From NCBI RefSeq assembly GCF_046119375.1, contig NW_027362768.1, positions 311,798,001 to 311,862,000 on the forward strand: 64,000 nt of DNA, read 5' to 3'. Position numbers and translations under genes: made by a program. Below, in pieces: positions 9,035 through 64,000 of the stretch (positions within the stretch are counted from its first letter, which is position 1; each line of letters starts with the position of its first letter). This DNA comes from Phyllobates terribilis (lineage: Eukaryota). The notes beneath the pieces are model-generated. The model did not search any database. It was not told the DNA's origin and worked only from the letters and a program-made list of their open reading frames with translations.

Positions 9035-12000
9035 GTACCCCCCCCTTTAGGCCCCCCCTTTTTTAGGCCAGACAGAAATTTAGCAAGGATGAGAGGGGCA
9101 TGGATGTTCTCCCGGGGCTCCCACGTTCTCTCTTCAGGACCAAACCCCTTCCAATCTACTAGAAAAAAGGTCTTTCCTCTTACCCTTTTTGTGGCCAGAA
9201 TGTTCTCTACCTCAAACTCGTTTTCAGCGGAAACCGGAGCAGGAGGCGTACCTGTAGACTTGGAAAAAGAGTTAAGTACCACGGGTTTGAGGAGAGATAC
9301 ATGGAAGGAGTTAGGGATCCGCAAGTTGGCCGGGAGTTTCAATTTATAGGCCACCGGGTTGATCTGACTGATGACCTCCAGAGGACCGATGAACCGAGGC
9401 CCTAACTTATAGGAAGGAATCTTGAGCCGGACATACTTGGACGAGAGCCAGACCTTATCCCCTGGACGGAATTGAGGAGGATCCAGACGTTTTTTGTCAG
9501 CATGTCTTTTCATACGCTCGGACGACTGAAGGAGTGCAGACCGGGTACTCTCCCTCATGGAGGAAAATTTGTTAACAAGAGATTCCGCAGCCGGATTATC
9601 CACCGAGGTGGAGACGGGAAATGGGATCCGAGGATGCTGACCGAAGACTACAAAAAACGGGGATTCGGAGGAAGATTCGCTCTCGTGATTGTTGTAAGAG
9701 AATTCGGCCCATGGCAGGAGATCCACCCAGTCAGAATGGTGGGCATTAACGAAGTGCCGGAGGTAACTGGTCAGGATCTGATTGATCCGCTCCACTTGAC
9801 CATTAGACTGTGGGTGGTAAGCGGAGGAGAAGTCCAGGGTGACGTCTAGCAATTTACAAGTGGCTCTCCAGAAACGTGAGGTGAACTGTACCCCACGATC
9901 CGACACGATGTGGAGGGGCAGGCCATGAAGACGGAAGATGTGGCGGATAAAGTCTTTAGCCAGCTCGGGTGCAGACGGGAGGCCTGGCAGGGGAATAAAG
10001 TGAGCCATCTTGGAAAAGCGGTCAGCGACCACCCAAATGACCGTACAACCGGCAGAGACGGGGAGATCAGTTATGAAGTCCATAGCAATATGCTGCCAGG
10101 GGGCAGCAGGCACAGGAAGCGGAAGGAGGCGACCGGCTGGCAGGTGTCTCGGGACTTTGTTGCGGGCGCAGGACACACAGGCAGAAACAAAGTCTATTAC
10201 GTCCTTGTGCAGGGTAGGCCACCAGTAGTGCCGGGTAATAAGCTGGAGGGTCTTTTTCTGACTGGCGTGGCCAGCTAGTTTAGACGAATGGCCCCAGTGT
10301 AGGATCTTCTCCCGATCAGGTACTGAAACGAACGTCTTACCGGGAGGGAGACGATTTAGACTCACAGGAGCCACCTGCATTACTCTGGCGGGATCGATGA
10401 TATGTTTAGGTTCTTCCTCGAGATCGGACACCAGAAAGGATCGGGACAAGGCGTCTGCTTTGATGTTTTTGTCAGCCGGGCGAAAATGAAGAACAAAATC
10501 AAAGCGAGCAAAAAACAAGGACCACCGGGCTTGGCGCGGGTTAAGTCTCTGGGCATGCTGGAGGTAAGCCAAGTTCTTGTGGTCAGTGTAAACTATTACC
10601 GGGTGAAGAGCCCCCTCGAGTAGGTAACGCCACTCCTCCAATGCCAGCTTGATGGCCAATAACTCTCGGTCTCCTATGGAATAGTTGCGCTCAGAAGAGG
10701 AGAAGAGTTTGGAGAAGAAGCCACAAGTTACCATTCTCCCGGAAGACGATTTTTGGGTAAGTACCGCTCCGGCTCCAGAGGAGGAGGCGTCAACTTCCAG
10801 GAAGAACTGCTTGTTGCCGTCCGGGCGATGCAGCACCGGGGCGGAAGAGAAGGCCTGTTTTAAGGAAAGAAAGGCCTCCTCTGCTTCGGACGGCCACTCT
10901 CTGGGATTAGTGCCCTTACGGGTGAGCGCGGAAATTGGGGGCAGTCCGGGAAGAGAAGTGCGGTATGAAGAGGCGGTAGTAGTTGGCGAAGCCCAGGAAC
11001 CACTGAATAGCCTTCAACCCCTCCGGTCGAGGCCATTTCTCGATGGCAGACAGTTTCTCTGGATCCATTCGGAGGCCGGTCTGAGAAATAATGTAGCCCA
11101 AAAACGGAAGCGAGGTCTGCTCAAAGAGGCACTTCTCATATTTAGCGAAGAGGAGATTCTGCCTGAGCCTGAGCAGGACCTGACGAACATCTCTCCGGAT
11201 CTCCAGACTCACCGGAGGGAAGACCAAGATGTCGTCCAGGTACACCACTACGCAGGAGTAGAGAAGGTCCCGGAAGATGTCATTTACCAACTCTTGAAAG
11301 ACGGCAGGAGCATTACAGAGACCAAAGGGCATTACCAGATATTCATAGTGGCCGTCCCGGGTGTTGAATGCAGTCTTCCATTCATCCCCCTGACGGATAC
11401 GGACCAGGTTGTACGCCCCACGGAGGTCCAGTTTGGTGAAGATTCTAGCCCCCCTCAGACGATCAAATAACTCCGGAATGAGCGGAAGGGGGTACTTATT
11501 CTTCACCGTGATCTGGTTAAGGCATCTATAGTCTATGCAGGGACGGAGAGAGCCGTCCTTCTTTTTAACGAAAAAGAAGCCTGCTCCCGCCGGGGAGGTA
11601 GATTTCCGGATGAATCCCCGGGCCAGATTCTCCTCAATATATTCGGACATCGACCGGGTCTCAGCAGCGGACAATGGATAAATACGCCCACGGGGAGGCG
11701 TAGTACCGGGTAACAGGTCGATAGGACAGTCGTATGGTCTATGAGGGGGTAATGTCTCTGCCTCCTTTTTATTAAAGACATCAGCAAATGACCAATAAGG
11801 AATCGGAAGTCCAGGTAGATTAGTTGGGGTAGGAGAAGGACGGACGGGATGAACGGGAACCAAACAAGTCTTATGGCAGTCCTGTCCCCAACGAAGGACT
11901 TGTCCGGTCTTCCAGTCAAGCACGGGTGCATGTTTCTGGAGCCAAGGTAGGCCTAGTAAGAGGGCGTGAGAGAGTCCAGGCAGAACATGAAAAGAGATGC

Positions 12001-45451: not shown

Positions 45452-47063
45452 TGTAAATTAAGCAAAAACCTCTTTTAGTCATTACAGGAACTGCTGTTCT
45501 GGAAAAACTGTTCCTCTGTAGTAACAATGTTAATCCACAGCCCTACGTCTACACCGCATTTTAGTGAATTATGAACTAAAAGTTTCTGTCTAAACATGTC
45601 TTCATAATTGTACCAGGCCATACCGTCAAAATTGCGGTATGCCTCCAATACAATATACATACATTGGGATAAGCCCGAACACAAATGAGATTTCTTTTCA
45701 CCTAAAAACAGAAGCGTAAATGGAAAAAATCTGAATCCAATTGTTGAAAGATTTAATAACCCCTTTTTTCTTATCATCACTTTCAGATTTTTCCATCCCT
45801 TTTATCCTGCTTAGGATCTCTTAAAGGGAGCAATGAAAAAATGTCTATGTATTTTAAATTCCAAATACGCTCCATAACTTAAATTAAACCCTAAAGGAGA
45901 GATTTCACAAACTAATCCTTCTTTGAGACAAGTCTCAGACACATCAGATCTTTTAGGAACTGATTTGCTAGATCTATCCAAAGAAACATCAGACCTAATA
46001 TTAGATAAAAACTCAGGCTCGTTAAACATGTCAAAAAAATTTCTTTAACTGTCTCTTTAAAAAAGTCTACATTAATATTAGAAGGAGGGACAGACAATGG
46101 CACATAAAATTTCTCTTCTTCACAGCATCTATCTGGTCCTGGGGTACCTGTGATGTCTTCTTCAGCCCTCATAACCTCCTGTAGTGGTGAGCACCGATGC
46201 CGCTAACCTTCTTTAGATCTTGCTGCTTCTTCCTCAGATGATGTATCACTGGCGTCGCACCAGGCACTGGACACTGATGCACTTACTCTTCTTGCACATC
46301 CCCTAGCGACCTGCAGTGACAAAATAGCGCTTACCGCAACTTGTTCTGATGCGTCCGGTCTCTCAAGGATCACCGCTAGTTCACAGACGCTCTTTGCTGA
46401 GGTAACAGATGCCGCCTTATGACGTTCACGATTACGCGACTCGGCCTTCGAACTTACGATAGGCGTTGACATTCTTCTGGATCCGGTCTTTTTCCTGGCG
46501 GTCAACATCGGTGGTGAGTATGCATTACGGCGTCTCCGTTTCCTTTTCAAGTTTAGATAGCTCTGATGCTCGTCCTCAACCGCCACTGCAGAATTCTCTT
46601 CAGGACTTACTTCTTGCTGAAACCCACTTATTCTTCTCTCTTCTTCAGCAATTGATTGAAGATGTTGCTCCTTAAGGCATCTCTTCAGCCAATCTTCCCT
46701 GTTGGCTTCCCTCGCTCTCCTCAACATCTGTTCAATAAGGCTCTCCATCTGTCTTCTTTCTTGATCTGACGGCGAATGCCAGCAGCTGACTGGAACTGTT
46801 GTTTAAATATAAGAGCAAACTCCCGCTCTTTTTGATCCAACCAATCATAACTCTTCAAAAAGACCGTGCAGCATAACTGCCAAGAACCAGTTCAAAGCTG
46901 CTCGTGCCTCAGCACCTACAAGAATAAACTGAACACAACTGTTAATAATATATAACTTTATAAATGAGCTTTAATAAAATGTTCACTTTATAGGGTCTGT
47001 GTGACCATGTATCCCCCATTTTAATATGGCGGGCCCCTCATTCTAATTGTCTTTACTTTTCTC

Positions 47064-47256
47064 GTGAGGTGCACATGTAACGTGATCTGGCAGAAGTTGC
47101 AGCCCATCGTGTGCCTTCCCCAACCGAGAAGACTTGGCTGCAGGTCACAGCAGGCTTTCAGAATGTGGCCAACTTCCCCAACTGCATGGGTGCCGTTGAT
47201 GATGGAAAACGTGTAACGGTTTAGCAGCCACCAAGATCAGGATCACACTTCTTTAA
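47064..47256 (+). pseudogene. PIF/Harbinger transposase fragment
   Basis: Hand translation with frameshifts gives TWLQVTAGFQNVANFPNCMGAVD and PPRSGSHFFN. Confidence 0.75.
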
Positions 47257-48523
47257 CCCCTTTCCGGCCCAAGGCATACTAATACGTATCTGTGCCCTGG
47301 GCCTTATGGGCCAGATACGTATTAGTACGCCTTGGCGATTTTGCCCGCACACGAGATCGCCGCCGATCCCTGCACATTAACTCCCGAAATGCTGCGATTG
47401 ACATCGATCGCAGCATTCCGGTGGCAAGAGGAGGTAAGCGTGATACTTACCTTCTCTGCCGGCGTCCCACGGCGTCTGAGTCCAGTCCCGAATGTTGTCA
47501 TGGTGACCCGATGTCATCATGGCAACATCTTGGTCACCAGGAGGCAGGAAGTTGCTTTGGTCATGCGCAGTGCGCGACCAAAGTAACTTCTCCCTGTGCA
47601 GCCTGGCTGCATAGCACAGGGATGGTACTGCATTCCTGTGCTATACAGCCGATCAGGCTGCAAAAAGTGAAAGTCCCATAGTGGGACAATGTGTAAAAGA
47701 TCAAAAAGTGAAAAAAAAAATAAAAAAAAAAAAATTTGTAAAAATATAATAAAAAAAAAGAAAAAAAAAATAAGAATATATTGTACCCATAAATAAATAA
47801 TCTTATAAAAAAAAAATAAACCAATAAAAGTACACATATTTCGTATCGCCGCGTCCGGAACGACCTGACCTATAAAACTGTCCCACTAGTTAACCCCTTT
47901 AGTGAACACGGTAAAAAAAAAAGAAAGAAACATAAAACGATGCTTTATCATCATACCGCCAATCAAAAAATGGAATAAAGCGCGATCAAAAAGACGAATG
48001 TAAATAAAAATGGTACCGCTGAAAACATAATCTTGTCCCGCAAAAAAACAAGCCACCATGCAGCTCCAACGGCCGAAAACTAAAAAAGTTATAACTCTCA
48101 GAATAAAGTGATGCAAAACAAAGAATAAGGCTGCCTTATCAATTTTACCACACGCAGAACGCCATAAAAAAATAAATAAATAAACAATTCCTGAATTGTT
48201 GGTTTTTGTTTATTCTGCCTCCCAAAAATCAGAATAGAAAGCGATCAAAAAATGGCACGTGCCCGAAAATGGTACCAATAAAAACGTCCTGCAAAAAACA
48301 AGCCATGACATGACTCTGTCGGCCGAAATATGGAAAAATTATAGCTCTCAAAATATGGCGATACAAAAACTAGTCTTTGCAAAAAAAAGGGTTTTTTAGT
48401 GTATGACAGCTGTCAATCATAAAAACCCGTTATGAATCTAATATCGTTGTAATTGCACCGAACCGAAGAATAAAGTCGTCTAATCACTTAAACCGCACAA
48501 GGAATGCTAGAAAAAATAAACTC

Positions 48524-48778
48524 TAGGGTTAGGGTTGTGCTAGGGTTAGGGTTGTGCTAGGGTTAGGGTTGTGCTAGGTTTAGGGTTAAGGTTGTGCTAG
48601 GGTTAGGGTTGGGCTAGGGTTAGGGCTGGGCTAGGGTTAAGGGTGGTCTAGGGTTAGGATTGTGCTAGGCTTAGGGTTCTGCTAGGGTTAGGGTTGTGCT
48701 AGGGTTAAGGTTAGGGTTGGGCTAAGGTTAGGGTTGGGGTTGTATTAGAGTTGGGGTTAGGCTTGTGTTGGGGTTGGG
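48524..48778 (+). repeat. Telomere-like TTAGGG-containing minisatellite
   Basis: TAGGGTTAGGGTTGTGC (17-mer) and variants. Confidence 0.9.
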
Positions 48779-48823
48779 ATTTTTTCAGAAGTAAAGAAAA
48801 AAATGACATGATGATATGGTGAC

Positions 48824-49135
48824 TAATGTTGAGCGCAAGTGCTTGATATTTGACTTTGCATCGGGTGCTTGGGTATGCACTGAGTATAGCGGGTGCTCGA
48901 GTGACATGCTCGAGTCTCCGTCCCATATGTTTTGCAGCTGTTATACAGCAAAAAAAACCATCGCGGGGATTGCCTGCCATGCACGAGCGATCCCCGCATG
49001 TTTTTTTTGGGGTGTCTAATAACAGTGAAACATGCGGGCGGGGACTTAAGCATGTCACTTGAGCACCCGCGATACTTGGTGCATACCTGAGTACCCGATG
49101 CAAACTCAAGTAGCGAGCACTTGCACTCAAGACTA
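48824..49135. mobile_element. Palindromic hAT-family MITE inside element D
   Basis: TAATGTTGAGCGCAAGTGCT...AGCACTTGCACTCAAGACTA; degenerate 8-bp flanks ATGGTGAC / ATGACAAC; orthologous copy at 60892-61191. Confidence 0.75.
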
Positions 49136-50429
49136 ATGACAACTTATTCAATATGATGAACTAATGTTATCAAATTCTGTGTCGTACCACTGGGATCAAA
49201 ATTTTCACTATACCCCTTGATAAAATCTTTGAGGGGTGTAGTTTTCAAAATGGAGTCACTTGGGGGGGGGGTTCCACTGTTTAGGCACATCAGGAACTCC
49301 CCAAACGCAACATGGCGTCCACTAATTATTTGAAACAAATTTTACATTCAAAAAGTCAAATGGCGCTCCTTCCCTTCCGAACCCTGCCGTGCGCCCAAAC
49401 AGTGGTTTTTCCCCACATATGGGTTATCAGCGTGCTCAGGAGGAATTGCACAACAAATTTTGGGGTTCATTTTTTAATGATACCCTTGCGAAAATAAAAA
49501 AATTGGGGTCTAAAGTAACATTTTTGTGAAAAAAAATAAATGTTCATTTTTTTTTCCACATTCCAAAAATTCTTGTGAAGCACCTGAAGGGTTAATAAAC
49601 TTCTTGAATGTGGTTTTGAGCACCTTGAGGGGTGCAATTTTTAAAATGGTGTCACTTTTGGGTATTTTCTGTCATAAAGGCCCCTCAATGTGATGTGGTC
49701 CCTAAAAAAATGATTTTGTAAATTTTGTTGTAAAAATGAGAAATCGTTGGTCAATTTTTAACCCTTATAGCTCCCTAATAGTGTTGAGCGAGCATGCTCG
49801 ACACTGCTCGGTACTCGCCCGAGCATCTCACTACTCGAGATGTTCGTCGAGCACCGAGCATTTCCGGGTTACTCGGGTGGGAGCTCGGGGCAACCCCCTG
49901 CACGTTTGGCACTCTTTGCAGAGCCAATGAACATGCAGGGATTGCCAGCCAGTCAATGTAATGCCGCAGCCATGTTGTTTGTGGGCATTACAGTGATTGG
50001 CTGGCCGCACAGCGTCACCTCGAGTATTTAAAACCGGGCGCCGTCATCTTGGACACAGTCGCTCCGGATCAGACAGTGTAGGGAGAGTGCTGCTGAGTTA
50101 GGGAGAGATATATGGTGCGAAATAGGTAGTGTAGGGTCTCTAAAGCCTGCCAAATCAAACAAACAGTCCTTCTCAGGACTAATATCCATCCCAGATATCA
50201 GGCAGGCAGGCTGTATAGGAGACGCAGTGGTTATACCAACAAACGCTGCATTACAGTCGTGTGTGTTCCTGTTGGTCAAATTGCTAGACTTATCCCCCGG
50301 TCTCAGGGGCCAGGAAAAATTCTTTTTTTTTTCATCTAAATCCTGTATTTTTTTTTTCCTCAGTCAGACTGTACAAATACGCGTCTTATTAACCTTTTGG
50401 TATCCCCCCCCCCCCCCAAAAAAAAAAAT

Positions 50430-51260
50430 GAGTGTGTCTGTGACTGTTCAGACGCCACTATATTTGTTTAAAAGAGTCTGGTGTAGGCCAGAGAAATAGA
50501 ACTGTGGTTTTGCAGTTCCACTGGTCAAATCTCTGTATTATCCTGCGTTAGGCATTTTTTGCCGTAAAAAAACTGTAATAGTGTCTCCCTGACTGTTCAG
50601 ACACAAATATATCTGTTTAAAAGAGTCTGGTGTAGGCCAGAGAAATAGAACTGTGGTTTTGCAGTTCCACGGGTCAACTCTCTGTATTATCCTGCTTTTG
50701 ATATTTTTTCCGTAAACAAAAACTGTAATAGTGTCTCCCTGACTATTCAGACACAAATATATCTGTTTAAAAGAGTCTGGTGTAGGCCAGAGAAATAGAA
50801 GTGTGGTTTTGCAGTTCCACGGGTCAAATCCCTGTATTATCCTGTTCTTGGCATTTTTTGGCGTAAAAAAAACTGTAATAGTGTCTCCCTGACTGTTCAG
50901 ACACAAATATATCTGTTTAAAAAAGTCTGGTGTAGGCCAGAGAAATAGAACTGTGGTTTTGCGGTTCCATGTGTCAAATCTCTGTATTATCCTGCTTTTG
51001 GCATTTTTTGCCGTAAAAAGAAACAGTAATAGTGTCTCCCTGACTGTTCAGACACAAATATATCTGTTTAAAAGAGTCTGGTGTAGGCCAGAGAAATAGA
51101 ACTGTGGTTTTGCAGTTCCACAGGTCAAATCTCTGTATTATCCTGCTTTTGGCATTTTTTGCCGTAAAAAAAATCTGTAATAGGGTCTCCCTGACTGTTC
51201 AGACACAAATATATCTGTTTAAAAGGGTCTGGTGTAGGCCAGAGAAATAGAACTGTGGTT
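50430..51260. repeat. Tandem repeat of about 150 bp, 5-6 copies
   Basis: ACACAAATATATCTGTTT recurs at about 50608, 50758, 50908, 51059 and 51210. Confidence 0.92.
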
Positions 51261-51343
51261 TTCCTCTTCCACGGTTCTAATCTCCTTTTTATTACCCTTT
51301 TTCCATTGATAGTGCGAGTGTAAGCTATTTTACTTAATTTACA

Positions 51344-54339
51344 ATGGGCAAGGCGCGTGGCAAGGGACGTGGAACTGGACTTTCTGGTGATGGTGCGTAT
51401 AGAGGACGGGACCTTTGCCAAGGTGAAAATGTGCCACAACCAACAGCCACATCTTCTCGCTCCCACTTCTTGACCGAATTACTAAGGAAGCTCACTACAA
51501 CACCAGTATTGCGAACTGATCAGTGTGAACAGGTTATTAATTGGATAGCAGATAATTTTTCCAGTTACCTGGGCACCACCACCTCCGGTCTGTCTTCCAC
51601 ACAGTCAAGTTTTAGTAGCCGTGAGTCTTGACCACATACTCCTCCTCACCCTGATGCTTCTTCCTCCCACCATGCCGAGTGTCATCAGACAGCAACTGAT
51701 CCCACAGTTGGACACTCTGAAGAACTGTTCACTGGTCCATTTCCATATTTGTGCCCCTTGTCTGCCCCACTTGAAGTGGTGGAAGAGGAGATCCCATGTA
51801 GCGATGCTCAAATATTTGAACAGCCACTGCCACAGGAAGTCGACGCTGGCAATTTTTCACAAGAGGTGGACGATGACGAGACACAATTGCCACGAAGTAA
51901 GGAGGAGGATCGTGGTGCGCAAGTGGAAGAGGAGGAGGTGGTGGATGATCTAGTAACTGACCCAACGTGGCAGGAGGACACGCAGAGCGAGGCCAGCAGC
52001 ACACAGGGGGAGGGAGGCAGAGTACCCCAACAGGCAGGAAGAAGCAGTGTTGTGGCCGCACACAGAAGGCGGGCAACAGTTCCCCGTAACACCAACACGA
52101 GGGACGTTGCCAGTACAACCGGTAGGTCTTCCAGAGTCTGGAATTTTTTTAAAGACTCTGCTGATAACCCCAAAAAGGCCATTTGTACCACCTGCCATGC
52201 CAGCATCAGCAGGGGTGACAAAACTACCAGCCTGACCACCACCAGCATGATCAGGCACATGTCAGCAAAGCACCCGACTTTGTGGGGCGAACCCCAGGGT
52301 CCATGACCAGTGTCAGCGGGTGTCACCACTGCTTCTTCCGCTGTTGTGCTTGTAATAGAACCCCCTGTTGTGCGTGCAAGGCAATCCCCTGTCCATACTG
52401 CATGCAAAGATGCCCCCTCCTCTCAGTCTTCACTTGTTATAGCAGTTTCTCAAGAAACAGCATCAACGTCCACGTCCCACGGCAGCGTTCAATTGTCCAT
52501 ATCCCAGAGCTTTGAACAAAAGCGCAAATTCACAGCCAACGCCCCACAGGCCACAGTCCTAAATTCGCACATTTCACGACTGCTTGCGTTGGAAATGCTG
52601 CCTTTTAGGCTGGTGGAGACGGAATCCTTCCGCAACCTTATGGTGGTGGCCGTCCCTCGGTACTCGGTCCCCAGCCAACACTATTTTGCCCGGTGTGCCA
52701 TCCCCGCACTACACAAGCACGTGTCCCAAAACATCTGCCGTGCCCTCAACAACGCAGTTCCTGGGAGAGTCCACCTGACAACGGACACATGGACAAGTGC
52801 TTGTGGCCAGGGACGGTACATCTCCCTGACAGCACACTGGGTAAACATAGTGGAAGCCGGGACCTAGTCGGACCTTGGGACTTAACACATCCTCCCCCCA
52901 CCGGGGATTGCGGGCCCTATGTCAGTCAGAGTTGCCCCCACAGTGTACAGCTCCTGAGCATCATCCGCCTCCTCCTCCTCATGTTCAACCTCCATCTCAG
53001 ATATCACCATATCAGTTACAAGCTGGAAGCACTGCTGTACTGCCTCAGCCAAGCGGCAACAAGCTGTGCTGAAACTCATAAGCTTAGGTGATAAACCTCA
53101 CACTGCTTGTGAGTTGTGGACAGCTGTGAAAGAGCAGGCAGATCTTTGGCTGAGACCGCTGAACCTACATCCAGGCATGGTCGTGTGTGACAATGGCCGT
53201 AACCTGGTGGCGGCACTGAGGCGAGGCGAGATCACAAACGTACCATGCCTGGCTCATGTGCTTAACCAAGATGGTGAGTGGCGATGACACCATCATTAGC
53301 GTCAGCATCCCACTTGTCTGTCTTTTGCACCGCTCTCTGCAGAGAATTAAAGAGGAGGCATTGCAGCCAGAGTATGATGAGATGGATCAAGAAGCCGTAG
53401 CGGGCGATTACACACAGCCCAGCCTCATCTCATCCCAACGTGCATTGGGGGACAATGAGGCATTGGAGGAGGAAGAGGAAGAGCAGGAGCTGTTATCATG
53501 CGCTGTAGACGGTAGTACCTGTACAACTGTCATTCCGTCGGTTCAGCGTGGGTGGCCTGAGGACAGGGGGGAGGAGGAGGAGGAGAGCATGGTCAGTCGT
53601 CATCTTGGTGAGGACACGGAAGTCTTGCCCGTTACCAGTCTGGCACGCATGGCTGACTTTATGTTATGCTGCCTTAACCGTGACCCTCGCGTTGTCAAAA
53701 TGTTGGGTGACGGTCATTACTGGTTGGTGACACTTGTAGACCCCCGCTACAAGGAGAACTTTAACTCTCTTATTCCTGAGGTGGAGAGGTCTACAAAAAT
53801 GTGGCAGTACCAGAAGGCCCTTGCTGCAGAACTGTTAAAAAAATTCCCATCTGAACATGCTAGCGGCAGAGGTCACAGTTCGTTGACCAACCAAGGCGTA
53901 CAGGCGAGAGAGACGCAACTCCAATCCAGCAGAGGCAGGGGAACACTGTCAACATTCTGGGACAGTTTTCTGAGAGCCGCCCAGCTTACAGGCCCTGAGG
54001 TGCTTGGTACTCCCACAAGGAGTGGAAAGTTTCAAAAGATGGTGAGGGAGTACCTTGCCAACCGAACCAGCATCCTCTGTGATTCCTCTGTGCCTTTTAG
54101 TTATTGAGTATCCAAGCTGGACACTTGAAATGAACTTGCTCTGTACGCCTTGGAGGTCCTGGCCTGCCCTGGCGCTAGCGTGTTATCGGAGCGTGTTTTT
54201 AGTGCCGCTGGGGGAATTATAACTGATAAGCGCACTCGCCTGCCAACTGACAATGCTGACAAGCTGACCCTTATCAAAATGAACAAGGGCTGGATTGGGC
54301 CAGACTTCTCATCACCACCAAATGACAGCAGAGTAACAT
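51344..54339 (+). pseudogene. hAT transposase (BED finger, DDE core, dimerisation domain), disrupted
   Basis: WNFF..AICTTC..IRHMSAKH, HLTTDTW, VCDNG, CLAHVLN, SERVFSAAG..ITDKRTRL; several stops and an apparent internal deletion after CLAHVLN. Confidence 0.92.
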
Positions 54340-54629
54340 AAAGTCAAATCTACTGTGTTATTTCGGGAGGTGTATTCCCATGCACCGCTTCACACCCACA
54401 CATGGGTATACGCTTCCTCATTTCGGCTGTTTTTTGCTCTTCTCCTTATCCTCAGCCGCCACCACCACTATACCACCAGGGTGACCGTGGTCCGTGTTGC
54501 CAGCATTGCAACTTCCTCCGTCCTAATTTTTTGGCAGCTTTTGCTTGGAAAGCATAGGCAAAGACTATGGGAGACCCACTCCCCAATAATGGGAATAATG
54601 TTTTTAATATGCTGTACTGCATGGCTCTT

Positions 54630-56496
54630 GTAAGGGGCATTAAAATCATCTTGTTAAGCTACTGCGACCTCCACGTCTCTTCCAAGGGGCATTAAAACCG
54701 TCTTGTTAAGCTACTGTGACCTCCACCACTTTTCCAAAGGGCATTGATATTGTCTTTTTATTCCACTGCGACCTCCACCATTCTTCCAAGGGCCATTAAA
54801 ACCGTCTTGTTAAGCTACTGCGACCTCCACGTCTCTTCCAAGGGGCATTAAAACCTTCTTGTTAAGATACTGTGACCTCCATGTCTCTTCCATGGGGCAT
54901 TAAAACCATTTTGTTAAGCTACTGCGACCTCCACCACTTTTCCAAGGAGCATTAAAACCGTCTTGTTAAGCTACTGCGACCTCCACCATTCTTCCAAGGG
55001 GCATTAAAACCGTCTTGTTAAGCTACTGCGACCTCCACCACTTTTCCAAGGGGCATTAAAACCTTCTTGTTAAGCTACTGCAACCTCCACGTCTCTTCCA
55101 AGGGGCATTAAAACCGTCTTGTTAAGCTACTGCGACCTCCACGTCTCTTCCAAGGGGCATTAAAATCGTCTTGTTAAGCTACTGCGACCTCCACCACTTT
55201 TCCAAGGGGCATTAAAACCGTCTTGTTAAGCTACTGCGACCTCCACCATTCTTCCAAGGAGCATTAAAACCATCTTGTTAAGCTACTGCGACCTCCACGT
55301 CTCTTCCAAGGGGCATTAAAACCGTCTTGTTAAGCTACTGCGACCTCCACCACTTTTTCAAGGGGCATTAAAACCTTCTTGTTAAGCTACTGCGACCTCC
55401 ACGTCTCTTCCAAGGGGCATTAAAACCATCTTGTTAAGCTACTGCAACCTCCACCACCTTTCCAAGGGGCATTAAAACCGTCTTTTTAGGCTACTGCGAC
55501 CTCTATGTCTCTTACAAGTGGCATTAAAACCTTCCTGTTAAGCTACTGCGACCTCCACGTCTCTTCCAAGGGGCATTAAAACCGTCTTGTTAATCTACTG
55601 CGACCTCCACCACTCTTCCAAGGGGCAGTAAAACCGTTTTATTAAGCTGCTGCGACCTCCACGTCTCTTTCAAATGGCATTAAAACCATTTTGTTAAGCT
55701 ACTGCGACCTCCAACACTTTTCCAAGGGGCATTAAAACCGTCTTATTAAGCTACTGCGACCTCCACGTCTCTTCCAAGGGGCATTAAAACCGTCTTGTTA
55801 AGCTACTGCGACCTGCACAGCTCTTCCAAGGGGCATTAAAACCGTCTTGTTAAGCTACTGTGACCTCTACCACTCTTCCAAGGGGCATTGATATTGTCTC
55901 TTTATTCCTCTGCGACCTCCACTACTCTTCCAAGGGGCATTAAAACCGTCTTGTTAAGCTAGTGCGACCTCCACCACTTTTCCAAGGGGCATTAAAACCT
56001 TCTTGTTAAGCTACTGCAACCTCCACGTCTCTTCCAAGGGGCATTAAAACCGTCTTGTTAAGCTACTGCGACCTTCACGTCTCTTCTAAGGGGCATTAAA
56101 ACCGTCTTGTTAAGCTACTGCGACCTCCACCACTTTTCCAAGGGGCATTGATATTGTCTTTTTATTCCACTGCGACCTCCACCATTCTTCCAAGGGGCAT
56201 TAAAACCGTCTTGTTAAGCTACTGCGACCTCTACGTCTTTTTCAAGGGGCATTAAAACCGTCTTGTTAAGATACTGCGACCTCCACCACTTTTCCAAGGG
56301 GCATTAAAACCGTCTTGTTAAGCTACTGCGACCTCCACCATTCTTCCAAGGAGCATTAAAACCGTCTTGTTAAGCTACTGCGACCTCCACGTCTCTTCCA
56401 AGGGGCATTAAAACCGTCTTGTTAAGCTACTGCGACCTCCACCACTTTTTCAAGGGGCATTAAAACCTTCTTGTTAAGCTACTACCACCTCCACGT
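54630..56496. repeat. 52-bp satellite, about 36 copies
   Basis: Unit AAGGGGCATTAAAACCGTCTTGTTAAGCTACTGCGACCTCCACGTCTCTTCC. Confidence 0.95.
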
Positions 56497-59209
56497 TGTA
56501 GCGTCGGCGTCCCTGCCTCCTGCTAGGCAGGGACGCTGTTCCCCTCACCTCTCCGCTCCGTGCCCGGCGTCCTCCTCCCGCTCTGCTGGCAGCGCGCGCT
56601 GCTTCCCGGCCACTGTGCTTAGGGCGCGCGTGCGCTCCCCCTCTCTTAAAGGGGCCGCGCGCGCCGTCCTAAGGAGTCCCCGGCCAATGGCCGGAGGGCC
56701 TCACCATATTTAAGGCACCTCCTCCAAAATGGAGGTGCCCGAGCAATGTTGTTGCATAGCCTATCACTCTGCTCCAGCCCTCAGGTCCCGTTACCAGATA
56801 CCTGCCAGTTACCTGCCAGATTCCTGCTTCATACCTGCCTGATACTTGCATTCCTGCGGTCCGACAGTCTACCTACCAGCCCTGCCAGTCTGTCTATGCA
56901 TCTGATTGCCCGCTCACCTGGGAGCGCTCATCTGCTACCTGCCTGCTAGCCTACCTGGAGGCTCTGCCGTCACATGCTGTGACCACCTGCCTGTCCAGAG
57001 ACTCTTGCCCGCTCACCTGGGAGTGTCCACCTGCTACCTGCCTGCTAGTCTACCTGGAGGCTCTGCCGTCACGTGCTGTGACCACCTGCCTGTCCAGAGA
57101 CTCTTACCCGCTCACCTGGGAGCGTCCGCCTGCTACCTGCCTGCTAGCCTACCTGGAGGCTCTGCTGTCACCTGCTGTGACAACCTGCCTGTCCAGAGAC
57201 TCTTACCCGCTCACCTGGGAGCGTCCGCCTGCTACCTGCCTGCTAGCCTACCTGGAGGCTCTGCCGTCACCTGCTGTGACCACCTGCCTGTCCAGAGACT
57301 CTTGCCCGCTCACCTGGGAGCGTCCACCTGCTACCTGCCTGCTAGCCTACCTGGAGGCTTAGCCATCACTTGCTGTGACCACCTGCCTGTCCAGAGACTC
57401 TTGCCCGCTCACCTGGGAGCGTCCACCTGCTACCCGCCTGCTAGCCTATCTGGAGGCTTAGCCGTCACTTGCCGTGACCACCCGCCTGTCCAGAGACTGT
57501 CCCCGTCACTTGCCGTGACCTCCTGCCCTTCTACCCAGAGACTGTCCCCGTCACTTGCCGTGATCTCCTGCCCTTCTACCCAGAGACTGTCCCCGTCACT
57601 TGCCGTGATCTCCTGCCCTTCTACCCAGAGACTGTCCCCGTCACTTGCCGTGACTACCTGCCCGCCTACCCTGGGAGCCACCCTCTTCCTTACAAGGACT
57701 GGCCCTTTGTATCGTTGCTCAGAGGTTCCACCTCCCAGACCCGTTACAGTTTGCTCAGGCCATGGAACCCGGTGGCACCCAAGCTCCCTCGCTCTCGGAT
57801 CTATGTTATGAACTGTCCCGTCAGAGGTCCCAACAGGAGTCCATCCTGAGTCATCTGCGGAATTTCAACTCTCGCCTGGACACTCTGACTGCTCCACCAG
57901 CAACCACCGCTAGTGTCATGACTCGCAGCCCGGCAGCTCCGCTGCCCACCAATACCATGGCATCCTGCTCCGGACCCCGGCTTTCTGCACCTCCTCGCTT
58001 CGGAGGCGACCCCGCTCAAGCTCGGGGCTTCATAAACCAGTGCACCCTGCACTTTGAACTCCTGAGCCACCAGTTTATCTCCGACGGGCCAAAGTAGCCT
58101 TCATCATGTCCCATCTCACGGGGGAGGCACTGGCTTGGCTAAATCCTCTATGGGAGAGAGGAGACCCCCTGGTGTCCAACCTGCCAGCCTTTCTCACGGC
58201 TTTCCGGAAAGTCTTCGACGAACCCGGACGGAAGACCTCATCCGCATCATCTCTGCTACGCCTCCATCAAGGAAATCTCACCGTGGGCCAATATGCCATA
58301 CGGTTCCGTACCCTTGCTTCGGAGCTGGCCTGGTATAACGACGCCCTGGTGTCTGTCTTTTGGGATGGTCTGTCCGGCCGTATTAAAGATGAACTCGCCG
58401 GTCGGGACATTCCTACCACTCTCGACGACTTAATAACTCTTGCCACCCGGATTGACATCCGGTTCCAGGAACGCGCCAAAGAGGTCACCCGTGAGAGGAG
58501 GTTTCCACGTCTAGCCCCTACGTTTCAGAAATCTGTCACTTCTCCCGGTACTTCCCAGGCACACTCACCCGAGCCTATGCAGGTCGACCAGACCAAGATG
58601 GTCAAGACCCGTCAAGAGTTACGCCGAGCCGAGGGGAGCTGCTTCTACTGTGGCAGTAAGGAGCACCGGATCCGTTCCTGCCCGGAGAGGTCGGGAAACG
58701 CCTGTGTCTAGGATCGCTCAGAGAGGTCGCCCTAGACAGAAGTAAACCCTCTCCATCTCTGTTGCTGTCGGTCTCTATCATCTGCGGGGAGAACCGTTAT
58801 TTTGAACTAGCCCAACTTGACTCTGGAGCTGCCGGAAATCTCATTTCTCAGTCCCTGGTAGAGAAATACCGCATTCCCACCAAACCTCTGGCTGTACCCT
58901 TATCTGTCGCTGCCGTGGATGGTGGCCTCTTACCACATCCCATCCAACTCATCACCGAATCCATAACCCTGCAGGTGGGAATGCTGCACTCTGAGAGCAT
59001 CTTATTTCATGTTCTGCCTGGACTCTCTCACGCCCTCTTGCTAGGCCTACCTTGGCTTCAGAAACATGCACCCGTGCTTGATTGGCAGACCGGAGACAGG
59101 ACTCCCGTAAGACTTGTTTAGTTCCCGTCCATCCTGTCCGTCCTTCTCCTACCCCAGCCAATCTACCTGGTCTTCCGGTTCCCTATTGGTCTTATGCGGA
59201 CGTCTTTAA
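56497..59209 (+). mobile_element. Gypsy family B, 5' part (LTR 56497-57748, gag, protease), cut by element D copy 2
   Basis: TGTAGCGTCGG...CCGTTACA LTR; gag ORFs 57762-58097 and 58106-58711; protease DSGA in 58762-59121. Confidence 0.93.
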
Positions 59210-60695
59210 CCCCTTAATAACATCTGACGTACTAATACGCGTCTGTGCCCTGGGACTTAAGAGCCAGACCCGTATTAGTACGTCATGGCGATCGCGCGCG
59301 CACACAGGCTGTGCGGGCGCGATCGCCGCCGGGTGTCAGCTGATTGTCACAGCTGACACCCGGTACTATGTGCAGGGAGCGGTCACGCACCGCTCCCAGC
59401 ACATTAACCCCCGCGATGCTGCGATCGAAGTCGATCGAAGTCGATCGCGGCATTGCGGGGGCAAGGGGAGGTGATCGCCGATACTCACCTCCTCTTCCGG
59501 CTTCCAGCGCAGTCTGCAAAGGCTTCCCGGGTGTTGCCATGACGACCCGATGTCGTCATGACAACATCCGGGTCACCAGAGAGCAGGAAGATTGCTTGGA
59601 CATGCGCAGTGCATCTCCAAGCAATCTTCACACTGTGCACTTCTGACAGCCTTCATGGCATAGGGATGGTGCTCCATTCCTGTGCCATGCAGGCGATCAG
59701 AAAAAAAAAAGTGAAAGTCCCAGAGTGGGACAAAGTAATAAAGTGTATAAACTGTGTGAAAGTGGAAAAAAAAAAAAAAAAAAATGTGCAAAAATATTAT
59801 AAAAAAATAAAAAAAATAATACACCAAAAATAAAAATATAATGTACCCATCAATAAATATTATTATAAAAAAAATAAAAAAAAAACAATAAAAGTACACA
59901 TATTTGGTATCGCCGCGTCCGGAACAACCTGACCTATAAAACTGTCCCACTAGTTAACCCCTTCAGTGAACACGGTAAAAAAAAAAAAAAAAAAACCAAG
60001 CAAAAAACAATGCTTTATCACCATACCGCCAAACAAAAAGTGGAATAACACGCGATCAAAAAGACGCATATAAATAAAAATGATACCGCTGAAAACGTCA
60101 TCTCGTCCCGCAAAAAACAAGCCGCCATATAGCTCCATCAGCCGAAAAATAAAAAAGTTATAGCTCTCAGAATAAAGCGATACTAAAAAATATTTTTTTC
60201 TATAAAAAAGCTTTTATTGTGTATAAGCGCCAAAACATAGAAAAATTATACAAATGTGGTACCGCTGTAAACGTACTGACCCGAAGAGTAAAGCTGCCTC
60301 ATCAATTTTACCACACGCGGAACAGAATAAAAAAAAAAAAAAAAAACAATTCCTGAATTGTTGGTTTTTGTTTATTCTGCCTCCCAAAAATCGGAATAGA
60401 AAGCGATCAAAAAATGTCACGTGCCTGAAAATGGCACCAATAACAACGTCAAGTCATCCCGCAAAAAACGAGCCGTCACATGACTGTCTGCCAAAATTTG
60501 GAAAAATTATAGCTCTCAAAATATGGCGATGCAAAAACTAGATTTTACAAAAAATGCGTCTTTTAGTGTGTGACAGCTGTCAGTCATAAAAACCCCATAT
60601 GATTCTGGCATTGCTGTAATCACACCGACCCGAAGAATAAAGTCGTCTAATCACTTATACCGCACAAGGAACGGCGTCAAAAATAAACTCTTGAG

Positions 60696-60849
60696 TTAGG
60701 ATTGGGCTAGGGTTAGGGCTGGGTTTGGGGCTAGGGTTGTGCTGGGGCTAGGGTTGTGCTGGGGCTAGGGTTGTGCTGGGGCTAGGGTTGTGCTGGGGCT
60801 AGGGTTGTGCTGGGGCTAGGGTTGTGCTAGGGTTAGGGCTGGGGTTGGG
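60696..60849 (+). repeat. Telomere-like minisatellite, second copy
   Basis: GGGCTAGGGTTGTGCTG 17-mers at the position homologous to 48524-48778. Confidence 0.85.
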
Positions 60850-61289
60850 ATTTTTTTCAAAAGTAAGAAAAAAAGATGACGATATGGCGACTAGTGTTGA
60901 GAGCAAGTGCTCGCTACTTGAGTTTGCATCGGGTGCTCTGGTATGCATTTAGTATCGTGGGTATTTGAGTGACATGCTCGAGTCTCTGCCCCATATGCTT
61001 CGCGGCCAAAAAACTTTACGGGGATTGCCTGCCATGCACGAGCGATCCCCGCATGTTTTTTTTTGGGTGTCTAATAACCGTGAAACATGCGGAGCAGGGA
61101 CTCGAGCATGTCACTCGAGCACACGCTGTACATGGTGCATACCTGAGTACCCGATGCAAACTCAAGTAGCGAGCACTTGCGCTCAAGAATAATGAAAACT
61201 TATTCAATATGATGACCTAATGTAAACAAATAATGTGCCGTACCTCTGGGTTCAAAATGTTCACTATACACCTTAATAAAATCTTTGAG

Positions 61290-64000
61290 GGGTATAGTTT
61301 CCAAAATGGGGACACTTGTGGGGGAGCTCCACTGTTTAGGCACATCACGGGCTCTCCAAACGCGACATGGTGTCCGCTAACAAATTGAATGGAAAATCGG
61401 CTCAAATTGTTAGCGGACGCCATGTTGCGTTTGGAGAGCCCCTGTGTGTCCAAACATTGGAGCTCCCCCACAAGTGACCCCATTTTGGAAACTAGACCCC
61501 CCAAGGCACCTATCTAGATGCATAGTGAGCACTTAGAACCCCCAGGTGCTTCACAAATTGATTCGTAAAAATGAAAAAGTGAAAAAAAAAACACTTTTTC
61601 ATTTTTATGAATCAATTTGTGAAGCACCTGGGGTTCCAAGTGCTCACTATGAATCTAGATAGGTGCCTTGGGGGGTCTAGTTTCCAAAATGGGGTCACTT
61701 GTGGGGGAGCTCCAATGTTTGGGCACACAGGGACTCTCTAAATGCAACATGGTATCCGCTAACAAATTAAATGGAAAATCGGCTCAAATTGTTAGCGGAC
61801 ACCACATTGCGTTTGGAGAGCCCCTCTGTGCCCAAACTTTGGAGCTCCCCCACAAGTGACCCCATTTTGGAAACTAGACCCCCCAAGGCACCTTTCTAGA
61901 TGCATAGTGAGCACTTGGAACCCCCAGGTGCTTCACAAATTGATTCGTAAAAATGAAAAAGTGAAAAAAAAAACACTTTTTCATTTTTATGAATCAATTT
62001 GTGAAGCACCTGGGGTTCCAAGTGCTCACTATGAATCTAGATAGGTGCCTTGGGGGGTCTAGTTTCCAAAATGGGGTCACTTGTGGGGGAGCTCCAATGT
62101 TTGGGCACACAGGGACTCTCCAAATGCAACATGATATCCGCTAACAAATTGTCGGCTCAAATTGTTAGCGGATATCATGTTGCATTTGGAGAGTCCCTGT
62201 GTGCCCAAACATTGGAGCTCCTCCACAAGTGACCCCATTTTGGAAACTAGACCCCCCAAGGCACCTATCTAGATGCATAGTGAGCACTTGGAACCCCTAG
62301 GTGCTTCACAAATTAATTCGTAAAAATGAAAAAGTGTTTTTTTTTTCACTTTTTCATTATTACGAATCAATTTGTGAAGCACCTGGGGGTTCCAAGTGCT
62401 CACTATGCATCTAGAAAGGTGCCTTGGGGGGTCTAGTTTCCAAAATGGGGTCACTTGTGGGGGAGCTCCAAAGTTTGGGCACAGAGGGGCTCTCCAAACG
62501 CAATGTGGCGTCCGCTAACAATTTGAGCCGATTTTCCATTCAATTTGTTAGCGGATACCATGTTGCATTTAGAGAGTCCCTGTGTGCCCAAACATTGGAG
62601 CTCCCCCACAAGTGACCCCATTTTGGAAACTAGACCCCCCAAGGCACCTATCTAGATGCATAGTGAGCACTTGGAACCCCTAGGTGCTTCACAAATTGAT
62701 TCGTAAAAATGAAAAAGTGTTTTTTTTTTCACTTTTTCATTATTACGAATCAATTTGTGAAGCACCTGGGGGTTCCAAGTGCTCACTATGCATCTAGAAA
62801 GGTGCCTTGGGGGGTCTAGTTTCCAAAATGGGGTCACTTGTGGGGGAGCTCCAAAGTTTGGGCACAGAGAAGCTCTCCAAACGCAATGTGGTGTCCGCTA
62901 ACAATTTGAGCCGATTTTCCATTCAATTTGTTAGCGGATACCATGTTGCATTTAGAGAGTCCCTGTGTGCCCAAACATTGGAGCTCTCCCACAAGTGACC
63001 CCATTTTGGAAACTAGACCCCCCAAGGCACCTATCTAGATGCATAGTGAGCAGTTGGAACCCCCAGGTGCTTCACAAATTGATTCATAAAAATGAAAAAG
63101 TGTTTTTTTTTTCACTTTTTCATTGTTACGAATCAATTTGTGAAGCACCTGGGGGTTCCAAGTGCTCACTATGCATCTAGATAGGTGCCTTGGGGGGTCT
63201 AGTTTCCAAAATGGGGTCACTTGTGGGGGAGCTCCAATGTTTGGGCACACAGCAGCTCTCCAAACGCAACATGGTGTCGCTAACAATTTGAGCCAATTTT
63301 GCGTTAAATTTGTTAGCGGACACCATGTTGGATTTAGAGAGCCGCTGTGTGCCCAAATATTGGAGCTCCCCCACAAGTGACCCCATTTTGGAAACTAGAC
63401 CACCCAAGGCACCTATCTAGATGCATAGTGAGCACTTGGAACCCTCAGGTGCTTCACAAATTGATTCATACAAATGAAAAAGTGTTTTTTTTTTCACTTT
63501 TTCATTGTTACGAATCAATTTGTGAAGCACCTGGGGGTTCCAAGTGCTCACTATGCATCTAGATAGGTGCCTTGGGGGGTCTAGTTTCCAAAATGGGGTC
63601 ACTTGTGGGGGAGCTCCAATGTTTGGGCACACAGGGACTCTCTAAATGCAACATGGTGTCCTCTAACAAATTTAACGGAAAATCGGCTCAAATTGTTAGC
63701 GACACCATGTTGTGTTTGGAGAGCCGCTGTGTGCCCAAACATTGGAGCTCCCCCACAAGTGACCCCATTTTGGAAACTAGACCCCCCAAGGCACCTATCT
63801 AGATGCATTGTGAGCACTTGGAACACTCAGGTGCTTCACAAATTGATTCATAAAAATGAAAAAGTGTTTTTTTTTTCACTTTTTCATTGTTACGAATCAA
63901 TTTGTGAAGCACCTGGGGGTTCCAAGTGCTCACTATGCATCTAGATAGGTGCCTTGGGGGGTCTAGTTTCCAAAATGGGGTCACTTGTGGGGGAGCTCCA
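61290..64000. repeat. Array of alternating-orientation monomers of about 190 bp (period about 380 bp)
   Basis: Palindromic centres occur every 190 bp or so, and the same short ORFs appear mirrored on both strands. Confidence 0.95.

What the first reader, a model, noticed from the sequence alone, without database searches (positions are those of the whole stretch)
61290..64000. Head-to-head/tail-to-tail satellite with flip/flop hairpin loops, grown from a transposon's internal repeat
Seen in sequence: monomers alternate orientation, so the array (over 2.7 kb) is a chain of palindromes. Type A centres AAAAGTG-(run)-CACTTTT lie at about 61586, 61969, 62341, 62724, 63107, 63489 and 63871. Type B centres lie at about 61395, 61778, 62155, 62533, 62915, 63295 and 63680. 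The unpaired loops occur in both orientations. Type A has an A-run left of 62155 and a T-run right of it. Type B reads ...GAAAATCGGCTC left of 62155, is shortened at 62155, is reversed at 62533-63295 and flips back at 63680. The unamplified single-orientation precursor is visible in element D copy 1 (about 49230-49330). Established knowledge: flip/flop loops and alternating concatemers are products of rolling-hairpin replication (parvoviral termini) and of repeated fold-back template switching, whereas ordinary satellites are head-to-tail. Inference: this array was built by iterative hairpin-primed copying inside a piggyBac-like element, possibly as a hairpin-ended extrachromosomal intermediate.
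Basis: partly seen in the sequence, partly recalled or inferred. Interest (0 to 1): 0.78.

Follow-up and report, generated by a model that had tools for sequence, protein, structure and literature searches.

The report
Transposon-borne tandem repeat of hairpin units
This is an ordinary head-to-tail tandem repeat, carried inside a frog cut-and-paste transposon, whose 382-base unit happens to be a hairpin-shaped pair of inverted halves; the 'flipped' loops come from two later inversions, not from a virus-like hairpin replication.

Summary
Window 61285-64000 is a 382-bp tandem array (7.1 copies, 93% matches, cut by the window end) made of ~190-bp arms in alternating orientation.

The arms form two classes (X and Y) that alternate strictly. 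Same-class arms one or more periods apart differ at 2-4 of 178 sites. Mirror partners differ at 10-15 sites, 5 for the one exceptional pair (arms 04/05). So the amplified unit was the already-diverged 382-bp dimer, repeated head to tail, not arm-by-arm hairpin copying.

The loop flips reduce to three polarity switch points and are best read as two inversions between inverted arms. One covers a two-unit block (about 61395-62155). The other is a small segment around the B hairpin at 63680, with breakpoints inside arms 12 and 13.

The array lies 2.1 kb inside a non-autonomous transposon that inserts at TTAA (piggyBac-like). An empty site in a retroelement confirms its left end.

Satellites with inverted subunits and with polarity switches are known (Tribolium). 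So is tandem-repeat growth inside frog transposons (Xenopus Xmix/Xstir). This scan has already noted the same 383-bp array in another piggyBac copy of this genome. Low to moderate interest.

The parts
61285..64000 (.). Tandem array, period 382-383 bp, at least 7.1 units, truncated by the window end. Each unit is two ~190-bp inverted arms (X and Y) around loop B (13 nt unpaired) and loop A (A10 or T10).
   Evidence: TRF; centres; inverted pairs; arm alignment; hairpin fold
61197..61395 (+). arm00: the transposon-backbone arm next to the first palindrome centre. It is orthologous to copy-1 arm 49142-49335 (85% identical) and only 80% identical to the array consensus.
61390..62160 (.). Two-unit block in reversed polarity (A loops read A10, B loops read Y>X), bounded by B centres 61395 and 62154.5. 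Read as one inversion with breakpoints in the stem next to the loop of arm00 and of arm05.
   Evidence: X-like bodies flank 61395, Y bodies flank 62155; the copy-1 loop matches the X>Y orientation 23/30
62140..62169 (.). Shortened B centre (loop lacks 9 nt). Arms 04 and 05 on either side are both class Y and share two otherwise unique variants in their B-proximal halves.
62160..63533 (.). Regular units in the polarity inferred to be original (T10 loops, B loops X>Y): arms 05-11 and the start of arm 12.
63534..63827 (.). Largest extent of the local inversion centred on B loop 63680 (smallest extent 63637-63724). Arm 12 is X-lineage at its A end and Y at its B end. Arm 13 is the reciprocal and shares a 1-nt deletion with arm 10.
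   Evidence: variable-site table; class painting
59207..61284 (+). Element D copy 2: TTAA target (59207-59210), left end starting CCCCTT at 59211, and 2.1 kb of non-coding backbone up to the array. Its right end lies beyond the window.
   Evidence: empty-site alignment; self-BLAST; no ORF of 150 aa or more; ORFs of 80 aa or more
47254..49775 (+). Element D copy 1 (80-83% identical to copy 2 over about 2 kb): TTAA then CCCCTT at 47254-47263, with no array.
49142..49712 (+). Copy-1 counterpart of the array region: two diverged direct arms (49142-49335, 49572-49712) with a weak inverted remnant (49387-49421) between them.
   Evidence: nhmmer; shuffle test

Best explanation
A non-autonomous, TTAA-inserting (piggyBac-like) transposon carries an internal satellite-like tandem repeat. 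The repeat unit is 382-383 bp and is an imperfect palindrome: an X arm and a Y arm of about 190 bp, inverted about a 13-nt loop (B) and joined to the next unit through a 10-nt A/T run (A). The palindromic dimer arose first, probably by fold-back at short inverted repeats that are still visible in the ancestral-type copy (inferred). Its two arms then diverged. The dimer was amplified head to tail by the usual satellite processes, unequal exchange or replication slippage with concerted evolution. This is shown by the class structure of the arms. Because every arm has inverted partners all along the array, exchange between inverted arms later inverted segments. One event turned a two-unit block (about 61395-62155), with breakpoints at homologous, loop-adjacent positions of arms 00 and 05. 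A second turned only the B hairpin at 63680 together with 40-150 bp of each stem. These two inversions account for all the flipped loops. They work like the flip-flop isomerisation of plastid genomes, not like parvoviral hairpin transfer.
For: Period-382 array. Two arm classes: within-class mean 6.9 mismatches, between-class mean 12.3 of 178 sites, permutation 12/5000. No arm has its mirror partner as nearest relative; nearest relatives (2-4 mismatches) are same-class arms one or more periods away. Fifteen class-diagnostic columns paint arm 12 as X then Y and arm 13 as Y then X, that is, a reciprocal exchange around loop 63680; arm 05 is Y throughout with an X loop half. In the array-less copy 1 the sequence after the homologous arm matches loop B in the X>Y orientation (23/30; the other orientation aligns only 8 nt). 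This makes the right-hand polarity ancestral and the left two-unit block, including both boundary loops, the inverted one. The array consensus is only 67-68% identical to the flanking arm over its A-proximal half, so the array is not a recent in-situ copy of that arm. The transposon's left end is proven by an empty site: the intact retroelement reads TTAA then its own sequence, while the interrupted copy reads TTAA then CCCCTT. Precedents: inversely oriented subunits and polarity switches in Tribolium satellites (PMC13081366); tandem repeats grown inside Xenopus MITEs (PMC6004289); inversion isomers produced by inverted repeats (PMC7145664).
Against: Arms 04 and 05, which face each other across the shortened loop at 62155, share two otherwise unique variants. 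This is what a local fold-back copy would give and needs an extra stem-homogenising conversion under the inversion model. The breakpoints of the two-unit inversion fall within about 14-20 nt of the loops, which is short for classical homologous exchange. Only about 7 units are visible and the right end of the array and of the transposon is outside the window. No reads are available, so the polarity switches could not be confirmed independently of the assembly.
Confidence: 0.7

Rival explanations
1. The polarity switch at 62155 (only this one) is a fold-back inverted duplication. A nascent strand that had copied arm 04 and loop B annealed to itself through the hairpin stem and copied arm 04 backwards, so the right-hand array is the derived polarity.
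For: Arms 04 and 05 are identical over their B-proximal halves, including two unique variants. The junction lies exactly in the stem next to the loop, and the loop carries a 9-nt deletion.
Against: The mirror does not continue. Arm 05's A-proximal half matches arm 07, not arm 04. Arm 08 is not a mirror of arm 01 (11 mismatches). The right part (at least 4.8 units) is longer than the left part (2 units) that would have served as template. The ancestral loop orientation in copy 1 agrees with the right part, not the left.
Confidence: 0.2
2. One reading: the whole array was built by iterative hairpin-primed (rolling-hairpin) copying, perhaps on a hairpin-ended extrachromosomal intermediate. The loop orientations are flip/flop products of hairpin transfer.
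For: Strict alternation of arm orientation and loops in both orientations. Very stable hairpins. Short inverted repeats at both centre positions in the ancestral-type copy could prime a first fold-back.
Against: The amplified unit is the diverged dimer, not the arm. Switch points lie at different arm positions: loop-adjacent at 62155, and between alignment columns 55 and 159 in arms 12 and 13. The visible 4.8 kb of the element holds no long ORF, so there is no sign of a nickase gene; the listed ORFs were not scanned against protein families.
Confidence: 0.05
3. The polarity switches (not the alternating arms) are assembly or read chimeras in a hard-to-assemble palindromic repeat.
For: Palindromic arrays are prone to fold-back chimeric reads and misjoins. 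No reads could be examined.
Against: The mirrored parts are not perfect copies: 2% divergence over 386 nt, and arms 04 and 05 differ at 5 sites. The 63680 event is a clean reciprocal mosaic with lineage-specific variants on both sides, which a read chimera would not produce. Earlier notes of this scan report similar arrays at other loci (not verified here).
Confidence: 0.1
4. The monomers are independent insertions of a palindromic MITE, one next to another.
For: Each 382-bp unit looks like a fold-back MITE.
Against: The period is constant at 382-383 bp. There is no host sequence between units and no recurrent TTAA or TA duplication at unit borders.
Confidence: 0.01

Closest known systems
Tribolium satellites with inversely oriented subunits and macro-dyad symmetries (T. 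brevicornis, T. madens; PMC13081366 and Mravinac et al. 2005 as cited in PMC9385698)
   Same: Head-to-tail arrays whose composite monomer is made of inverted subunits. Arrays change polarity at defined inversion sites, giving hairpin or cruciform potential.
   Different: Those are megabase (peri)centromeric satellites unrelated in sequence. This one is a short array inside a mobile element, and its inverted segments are only 0.1-0.8 kb.
Xenopus Xmix MITE with its amplified internal segment Xstir (Hikosaka et al. 2000, 2004, as cited in PMC6004289)
   Same: A frog TTAA-inserting non-autonomous transposon whose internal segment has been amplified into tandem repeats that travel with the element.
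   Different: According to PMC6004289, Xmix belongs to the T2-MITE family with a terminal AGGRR motif (Kolobok). Element D starts with CCC.
Xenopus Tx1D, a non-autonomous piggyBac family (PMC4494074). From memory, unverified here: it carries ~400-bp internal tandem repeats PTR-1 and PTR-2 (Garrett and Carroll 1986, 1989).
   Same: A frog piggyBac-type non-autonomous element with internal tandem repeats of about 400 bp.
   Different: I could neither read those papers nor compare sequences. Whether PTR units are palindromic is unknown to me.
Inversion (flip-flop) isomers generated by recombination between inverted repeats, e.g. plastid genomes (PMC7145664)
   Same: Exchange between inverted copies turns the segment between them. 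This explains loops in both orientations with mosaic arms.
   Different: The events here are fixed in a nuclear repeat. No evidence of coexisting isomers could be sought.
Parvoviral rolling-hairpin concatemers with flip/flop termini
   Same: Alternating head-to-head and tail-to-tail arrangement; asymmetric hairpin loops in two orientations.
   Different: The unit of amplification is the dimer, switch points are not at a fixed site, no long ORF that could encode a nickase lies in the visible part of the element, and the array is chromosomal inside a transposon.

Membership tests
Satellite or tandem repeat with a composite monomer of inversely oriented subunits | Head-to-tail periodicity of the composite (dimer) unit | tested here: met
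   TRF period 382, 7.1 copies, 93% matches
Satellite or tandem repeat with a composite monomer of inversely oriented subunits | Two subunit classes with class-specific substitutions that alternate along the array | tested here: met
   15 diagnostic columns; within-class mean 6.9 against between-class mean 12.3 mismatches; permutation 12/5000
Satellite or tandem repeat with a composite monomer of inversely oriented subunits | High copy number and long arrays genome-wide | not testable with these tools
   Only this window is readable. Earlier scan notes mention 13-kb and 18-kb arrays elsewhere, not verified.
piggyBac-superfamily non-autonomous transposon | Insertion at TTAA with duplication of the target | tested here: inconclusive
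   Left junction: TTAA then CCCCTT in both copies, and an intact retroelement copy shows the uninterrupted TTAA site. The right junction is outside the window, so the duplication is unseen.
piggyBac-superfamily non-autonomous transposon | Terminal inverted repeats beginning CCC | tested here: inconclusive
   Left ends begin CCCCTT. No right end of the form AAGGGGTTAA on the + strand lies in the window.
piggyBac-superfamily non-autonomous transposon | Related autonomous copy with a DDE transposase sharing the ends | not tested
   No transposase ORF in the visible 4.8 kb. Other notes of this scan report piggyBac transposases in this genome.
Rolling-hairpin replicon concatemer (parvovirus type) | Each new arm is a copy of its mirror partner (nested mirror symmetry) | tested here: not met
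   No arm's nearest relative is its mirror partner. Adjacent arms differ at 10-15 of 178 sites, apart from one pair at 5.
Rolling-hairpin replicon concatemer (parvovirus type) | Flip/flop inversions bounded by one fixed nick site at the hairpin base | tested here: not met
   Switch points lie next to the loop (62155) and between arm columns 55 and 159 (arms 12 and 13).
Rolling-hairpin replicon concatemer (parvovirus type) | An HUH nickase (Rep/NS1) encoded or supplied | tested here: inconclusive
   No ORF of 150 aa or more lies in 59207-64000. The ORFs of 80 aa or more there were not scanned against protein families, and the rest of the element is unseen.
Array of independent palindromic MITE insertions | Target-site duplications and host sequence between units | tested here: not met
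   Arms are contiguous, the period is constant, and there is no recurrent TTAA or TA at unit borders.

The most novel reading that the evidence does not exclude
The array is a nucleotide-resolution record of recurrent hairpin- or cruciform-driven rearrangement inside a mobile element. Fold-back at short inverted repeats created the dimer, and later inversions and stem-homogenising conversions start at the hairpin loops. Examples are the loop-adjacent breakpoints at 61395 and 62155, the shared variants of arms 04 and 05, and the 91% against 67% similarity step in arm00. If so, transposon-borne palindromic satellites would be natural hot spots where flip-flop isomers coexist in the germ line or soma.
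Probability: 0.12. Interest if true: 0.55.

Novelty: new member of a known kind. Interest (0 to 1): 0.3.

Why it matters
It gives a worked example of how to tell hairpin-primed copying from ordinary tandem amplification of a palindromic unit. The test asks whether mirror partners or same-class arms are the nearest relatives, and where the polarity switches fall. It also adds a frog case of a satellite-like repeat that rides in a cut-and-paste transposon and is reshuffled by its own inverted arms. It does not point to a new replication mechanism.

Tried and rejected
1. Rolling-hairpin or iterative fold-back growth: rejected on the arm-class structure and the scattered switch points.
2. Independent MITE insertions: rejected, no TSDs and no spacers.
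3. Mirror duplication about A centre 63489.5, suggested by 372-nt arms at 95% complementarity: rejected. The A-proximal parts of arms 12 and 13 keep the regular polarity and lineage variants, so only the B-proximal parts and the loop are turned.
4. Breakage at the tips of two loops followed by re-joining of the flipped fragment: rejected. It would give chimeric loops, whereas the loop at 61395 is complete and simply reversed.
5. Exact-match scan of metagenome contigs with an invariant 27-mer of the arm: 0 hits. No independent copies were obtained.
6. Full-text search for four arm fragments in papers: 0 hits.
7. Rfam on 47000-64000: no family.
8. Papers on Xenopus Tx1 and its PTR repeats are not held. 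The Tx1D comparison therefore rests on one citing sentence (PMC4494074) and on memory.
9. The inverted-arm remnant in copy 1 is weak (E 0.26; 1 of 300 shuffles reach its score) and is treated only as a hint.
10. The large protein searches were not used. The visible part of the element has no long ORF and no claim here rests on a protein.

Full report
**What is in the sequence**

- Window 61285-64000 is reported by Tandem Repeats Finder as one array: period 382, 7.1 copies, 93% matches. It runs off the end of the window.
- Within it, ~190-bp arms alternate in orientation.
- The inverted-repeat search lists 54 arm pairs; the longest is 386 nt at 98% complementarity.
- One unit folds as single-stranded DNA into a single hairpin with a 13-nt loop, -201.8 kcal/mol, z = -37.5 against shuffles.
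- Loop orientations are as described:
  - A loops read A10 at the two centres left of 62155 and T10 at the five to its right.
  - B loops read one way (here Y>X) at 61395 and 61777.
  - The B loop at 62154.5 has the same orientation but lacks 9 nt.
  - B loops are reverse-complemented (X>Y) at 62533, 62916 and 63298, and Y>X again at about 63680.

**What was amplified**

I cut the array at the centres into 13 complete arms plus two partial ones, turned them all to the A-to-B direction and aligned them. The 48 variable columns sort the arms into two classes.

- X arms (01, 03, 06, 08, 10) carry the T-run half of loop A and the GAGCCGATT half of loop B.
- Y arms (02, 04, 05, 07, 09, 11) carry the A-run half of loop A. 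All but arm 05 carry the GAATGGAAA half of loop B.
- The classes also differ at fixed sites inside the stems. Fifteen columns are diagnostic.
- Over 178 stem columns, arms of one class differ by 6.9 sites on average and arms of different classes by 12.3. Only 12 of 5000 label permutations reach this contrast.
- No arm has its mirror partner across a centre as its nearest relative. Mirror partners differ at 10-15 sites, with one exception at 5. Nearest relatives are same-class arms one or more periods away and differ at 2-4 sites, for example 02/04, 03/06, 06/08 and 02/07.

So the unit that multiplied was the 382-bp dimer, after its two arms had diverged. This is a head-to-tail satellite whose unit is a palindrome. 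It is not a product of arm-by-arm hairpin copying, which would make mirror partners the closest relatives.

**What the flipped loops are**

Painting each arm with the diagnostic columns shows exactly three places where polarity changes.

*The pair around B loop 63680*

- Arm 12 is X-lineage at its A end. There it shares variants with arms 10 and 14.
- Arm 12 is Y at its B end, where it shares the loop variant with arm 11.
- Arm 13 is the reciprocal. Its A end resembles arm 11. Its B end is X and shares a 1-nt deletion with arm 10.
- The A loops on both sides keep the regular T10.
- This is a reciprocal exchange between the two inverted arms of one hairpin. It turned the loop plus 40-150 bp of each stem: at least 63637-63724, at most 63534-63827.

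*The switch at 62155*

- Arm 05 is a Y arm in reverse orientation where an X arm is expected, so Y bodies flank that loop.
- At the other end of the reversed stretch, B centre 61395 is flanked by the backbone arm (arm00, X-like or ancestral at the diagnostic sites) and by X arm 01.
- This fits a single inversion of the two-unit block, including both boundary loops, with breakpoints at homologous loop-adjacent positions of arm00 and arm05.

*Independent support*

In the array-less copy 1 of the transposon, the sequence following the homologous arm matches loop B in the X>Y orientation at 23 of 30 positions. The opposite orientation aligns over only 8 nt. The right-hand polarity is therefore ancestral and the left block is the turned one.

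*What remains open*

- Arms 04 and 05 share two otherwise unique variants next to the shortened loop. This needs either a later conversion between the two stems or a local fold-back copy at that hairpin.
- I keep fold-back at 62155 as a rival (0.2). Against it: the mirror does not continue beyond about 100 nt, arm 08 does not mirror arm 01, and the supposed copy is longer than its template.

Exchange between inverted repeats that turns the segment between them is established behaviour. It accounts for the two plastid genome isomers (PMC7145664). Palindromes are also known to drive fold-back and inverted duplication (PMC7999016, PMC3315005).

**Context**

- Both copies begin with TTAA followed by CCCCTT, at 47254 and 59207.
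- Copy 2 interrupts a fragment of an LTR retroelement. The intact relative elsewhere in the window reads straight through the same TTAA. This is an empty-site proof of TTAA insertion and fixes the left end.
- The right end is beyond the window.
- The visible 4.8 kb has no ORF of 150 aa or more and no Rfam match.
- This fits a non-autonomous piggyBac-type element. Membership is not complete, because the right TIR, the target duplication and a matching transposase were not seen.

**Relation to the 'precursor'**

- Arm00 and copy-1 arm 49142-49335 are orthologous backbone (85% identical).
- The array consensus is 91% identical to arm00 over the B-proximal 100 nt but only 67-68% over the A-proximal 95 nt. 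A 19-nt block there fits the second copy-1 arm better.
- Array arms are 92-99% identical to each other. The array was therefore not copied recently from arm00 in place.
- Copy 1 holds two direct arms about 410-430 bp apart with a weak inverted remnant in register between them. This hints that the alternating arrangement is older than the split of the two copies. That point is weak.
- Short inverted repeats sit at the positions of both centres in the ancestral-type sequence. A fold-back origin of the first dimer is therefore plausible, but it is inferred.

**Comparison with what is known**

- Composite satellite monomers built from inversely oriented subunits, and arrays that switch polarity at inversion sites, are documented in Tribolium (PMC13081366; Mravinac et al. 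2005 as cited in PMC9385698).
- Tandem repeats that grow inside a frog TTAA transposon and travel with it are documented for Xenopus Xmix/Xstir (PMC6004289).
- Xenopus Tx1D is a non-autonomous piggyBac family (PMC4494074). From memory it carries ~400-bp internal tandem repeats, but I could not read those papers.
- This scan has already noted the same kind of array on other DNA of this genome. One is a 19-kb piggyBac with a 13-kb array of a 383-bp hairpin unit, judged an ordinary head-to-tail array (s1-211423). Another is a further 'flip/flop' note (s1-241560). I could not read those loci. My own test on this window reaches the same conclusion independently.

**Verdict**

The rolling-hairpin mechanism is not supported. 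The structure is a new member of known kinds: a palindromic-unit tandem repeat inside a transposon, with two inversions mediated by its own inverted arms. The polarity switches still need confirmation by spanning reads.

Noticed in passing
window 59120-59260 and 11720-11860 (- strand): Element D copy 2 is inserted at a TTAA inside a fragment of LTR retroelement family B. The intact B copy shows the uninterrupted site, so D moved after B.
   Followed up: yes
window 48523-48778 and 60697-60838: Both D copies contain a block of 17-bp repeats built from telomere-like TTAGGG variants (consensus about CTAGGGTTAGGGTTGTG).
   Followed up: no
window 60892-61191 and 48819-49140: A hairpin with 105-114-bp arms (81% complementary) lies just upstream of the array region in both D copies, so it is ancestral to the family. 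It is rich in GAGCA and CTCG motifs.
   Followed up: partly
window 47269-47335 and 59225-59285 (also 59287-59363, 59587-59629, 47384-47421, 47605-47650): The first 400 bp of D hold a series of short hairpins (14-24-bp stems). The subterminal one is kept in both copies although its sequence differs, which suggests that the structure matters, perhaps for transposase binding.
   Followed up: no
window 47890-47899 and 59954-59963: A second internal TTAACCCCTT motif lies about 640-750 bp inside each D copy. It could be an alternative or nested left end.
   Followed up: no
window 49776-56500: Right after copy 1, a different element starts with TAGTGTTGAGCG. It contains a 150-bp tandem array (50441-51284, 5.6 copies), an ORF with a BED zinc finger (51749-52306, E 7e-10) and a 52-bp array of 36 copies (54625-56494). 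It looks like a hAT-type transposon with its own internal satellites.
   Followed up: partly
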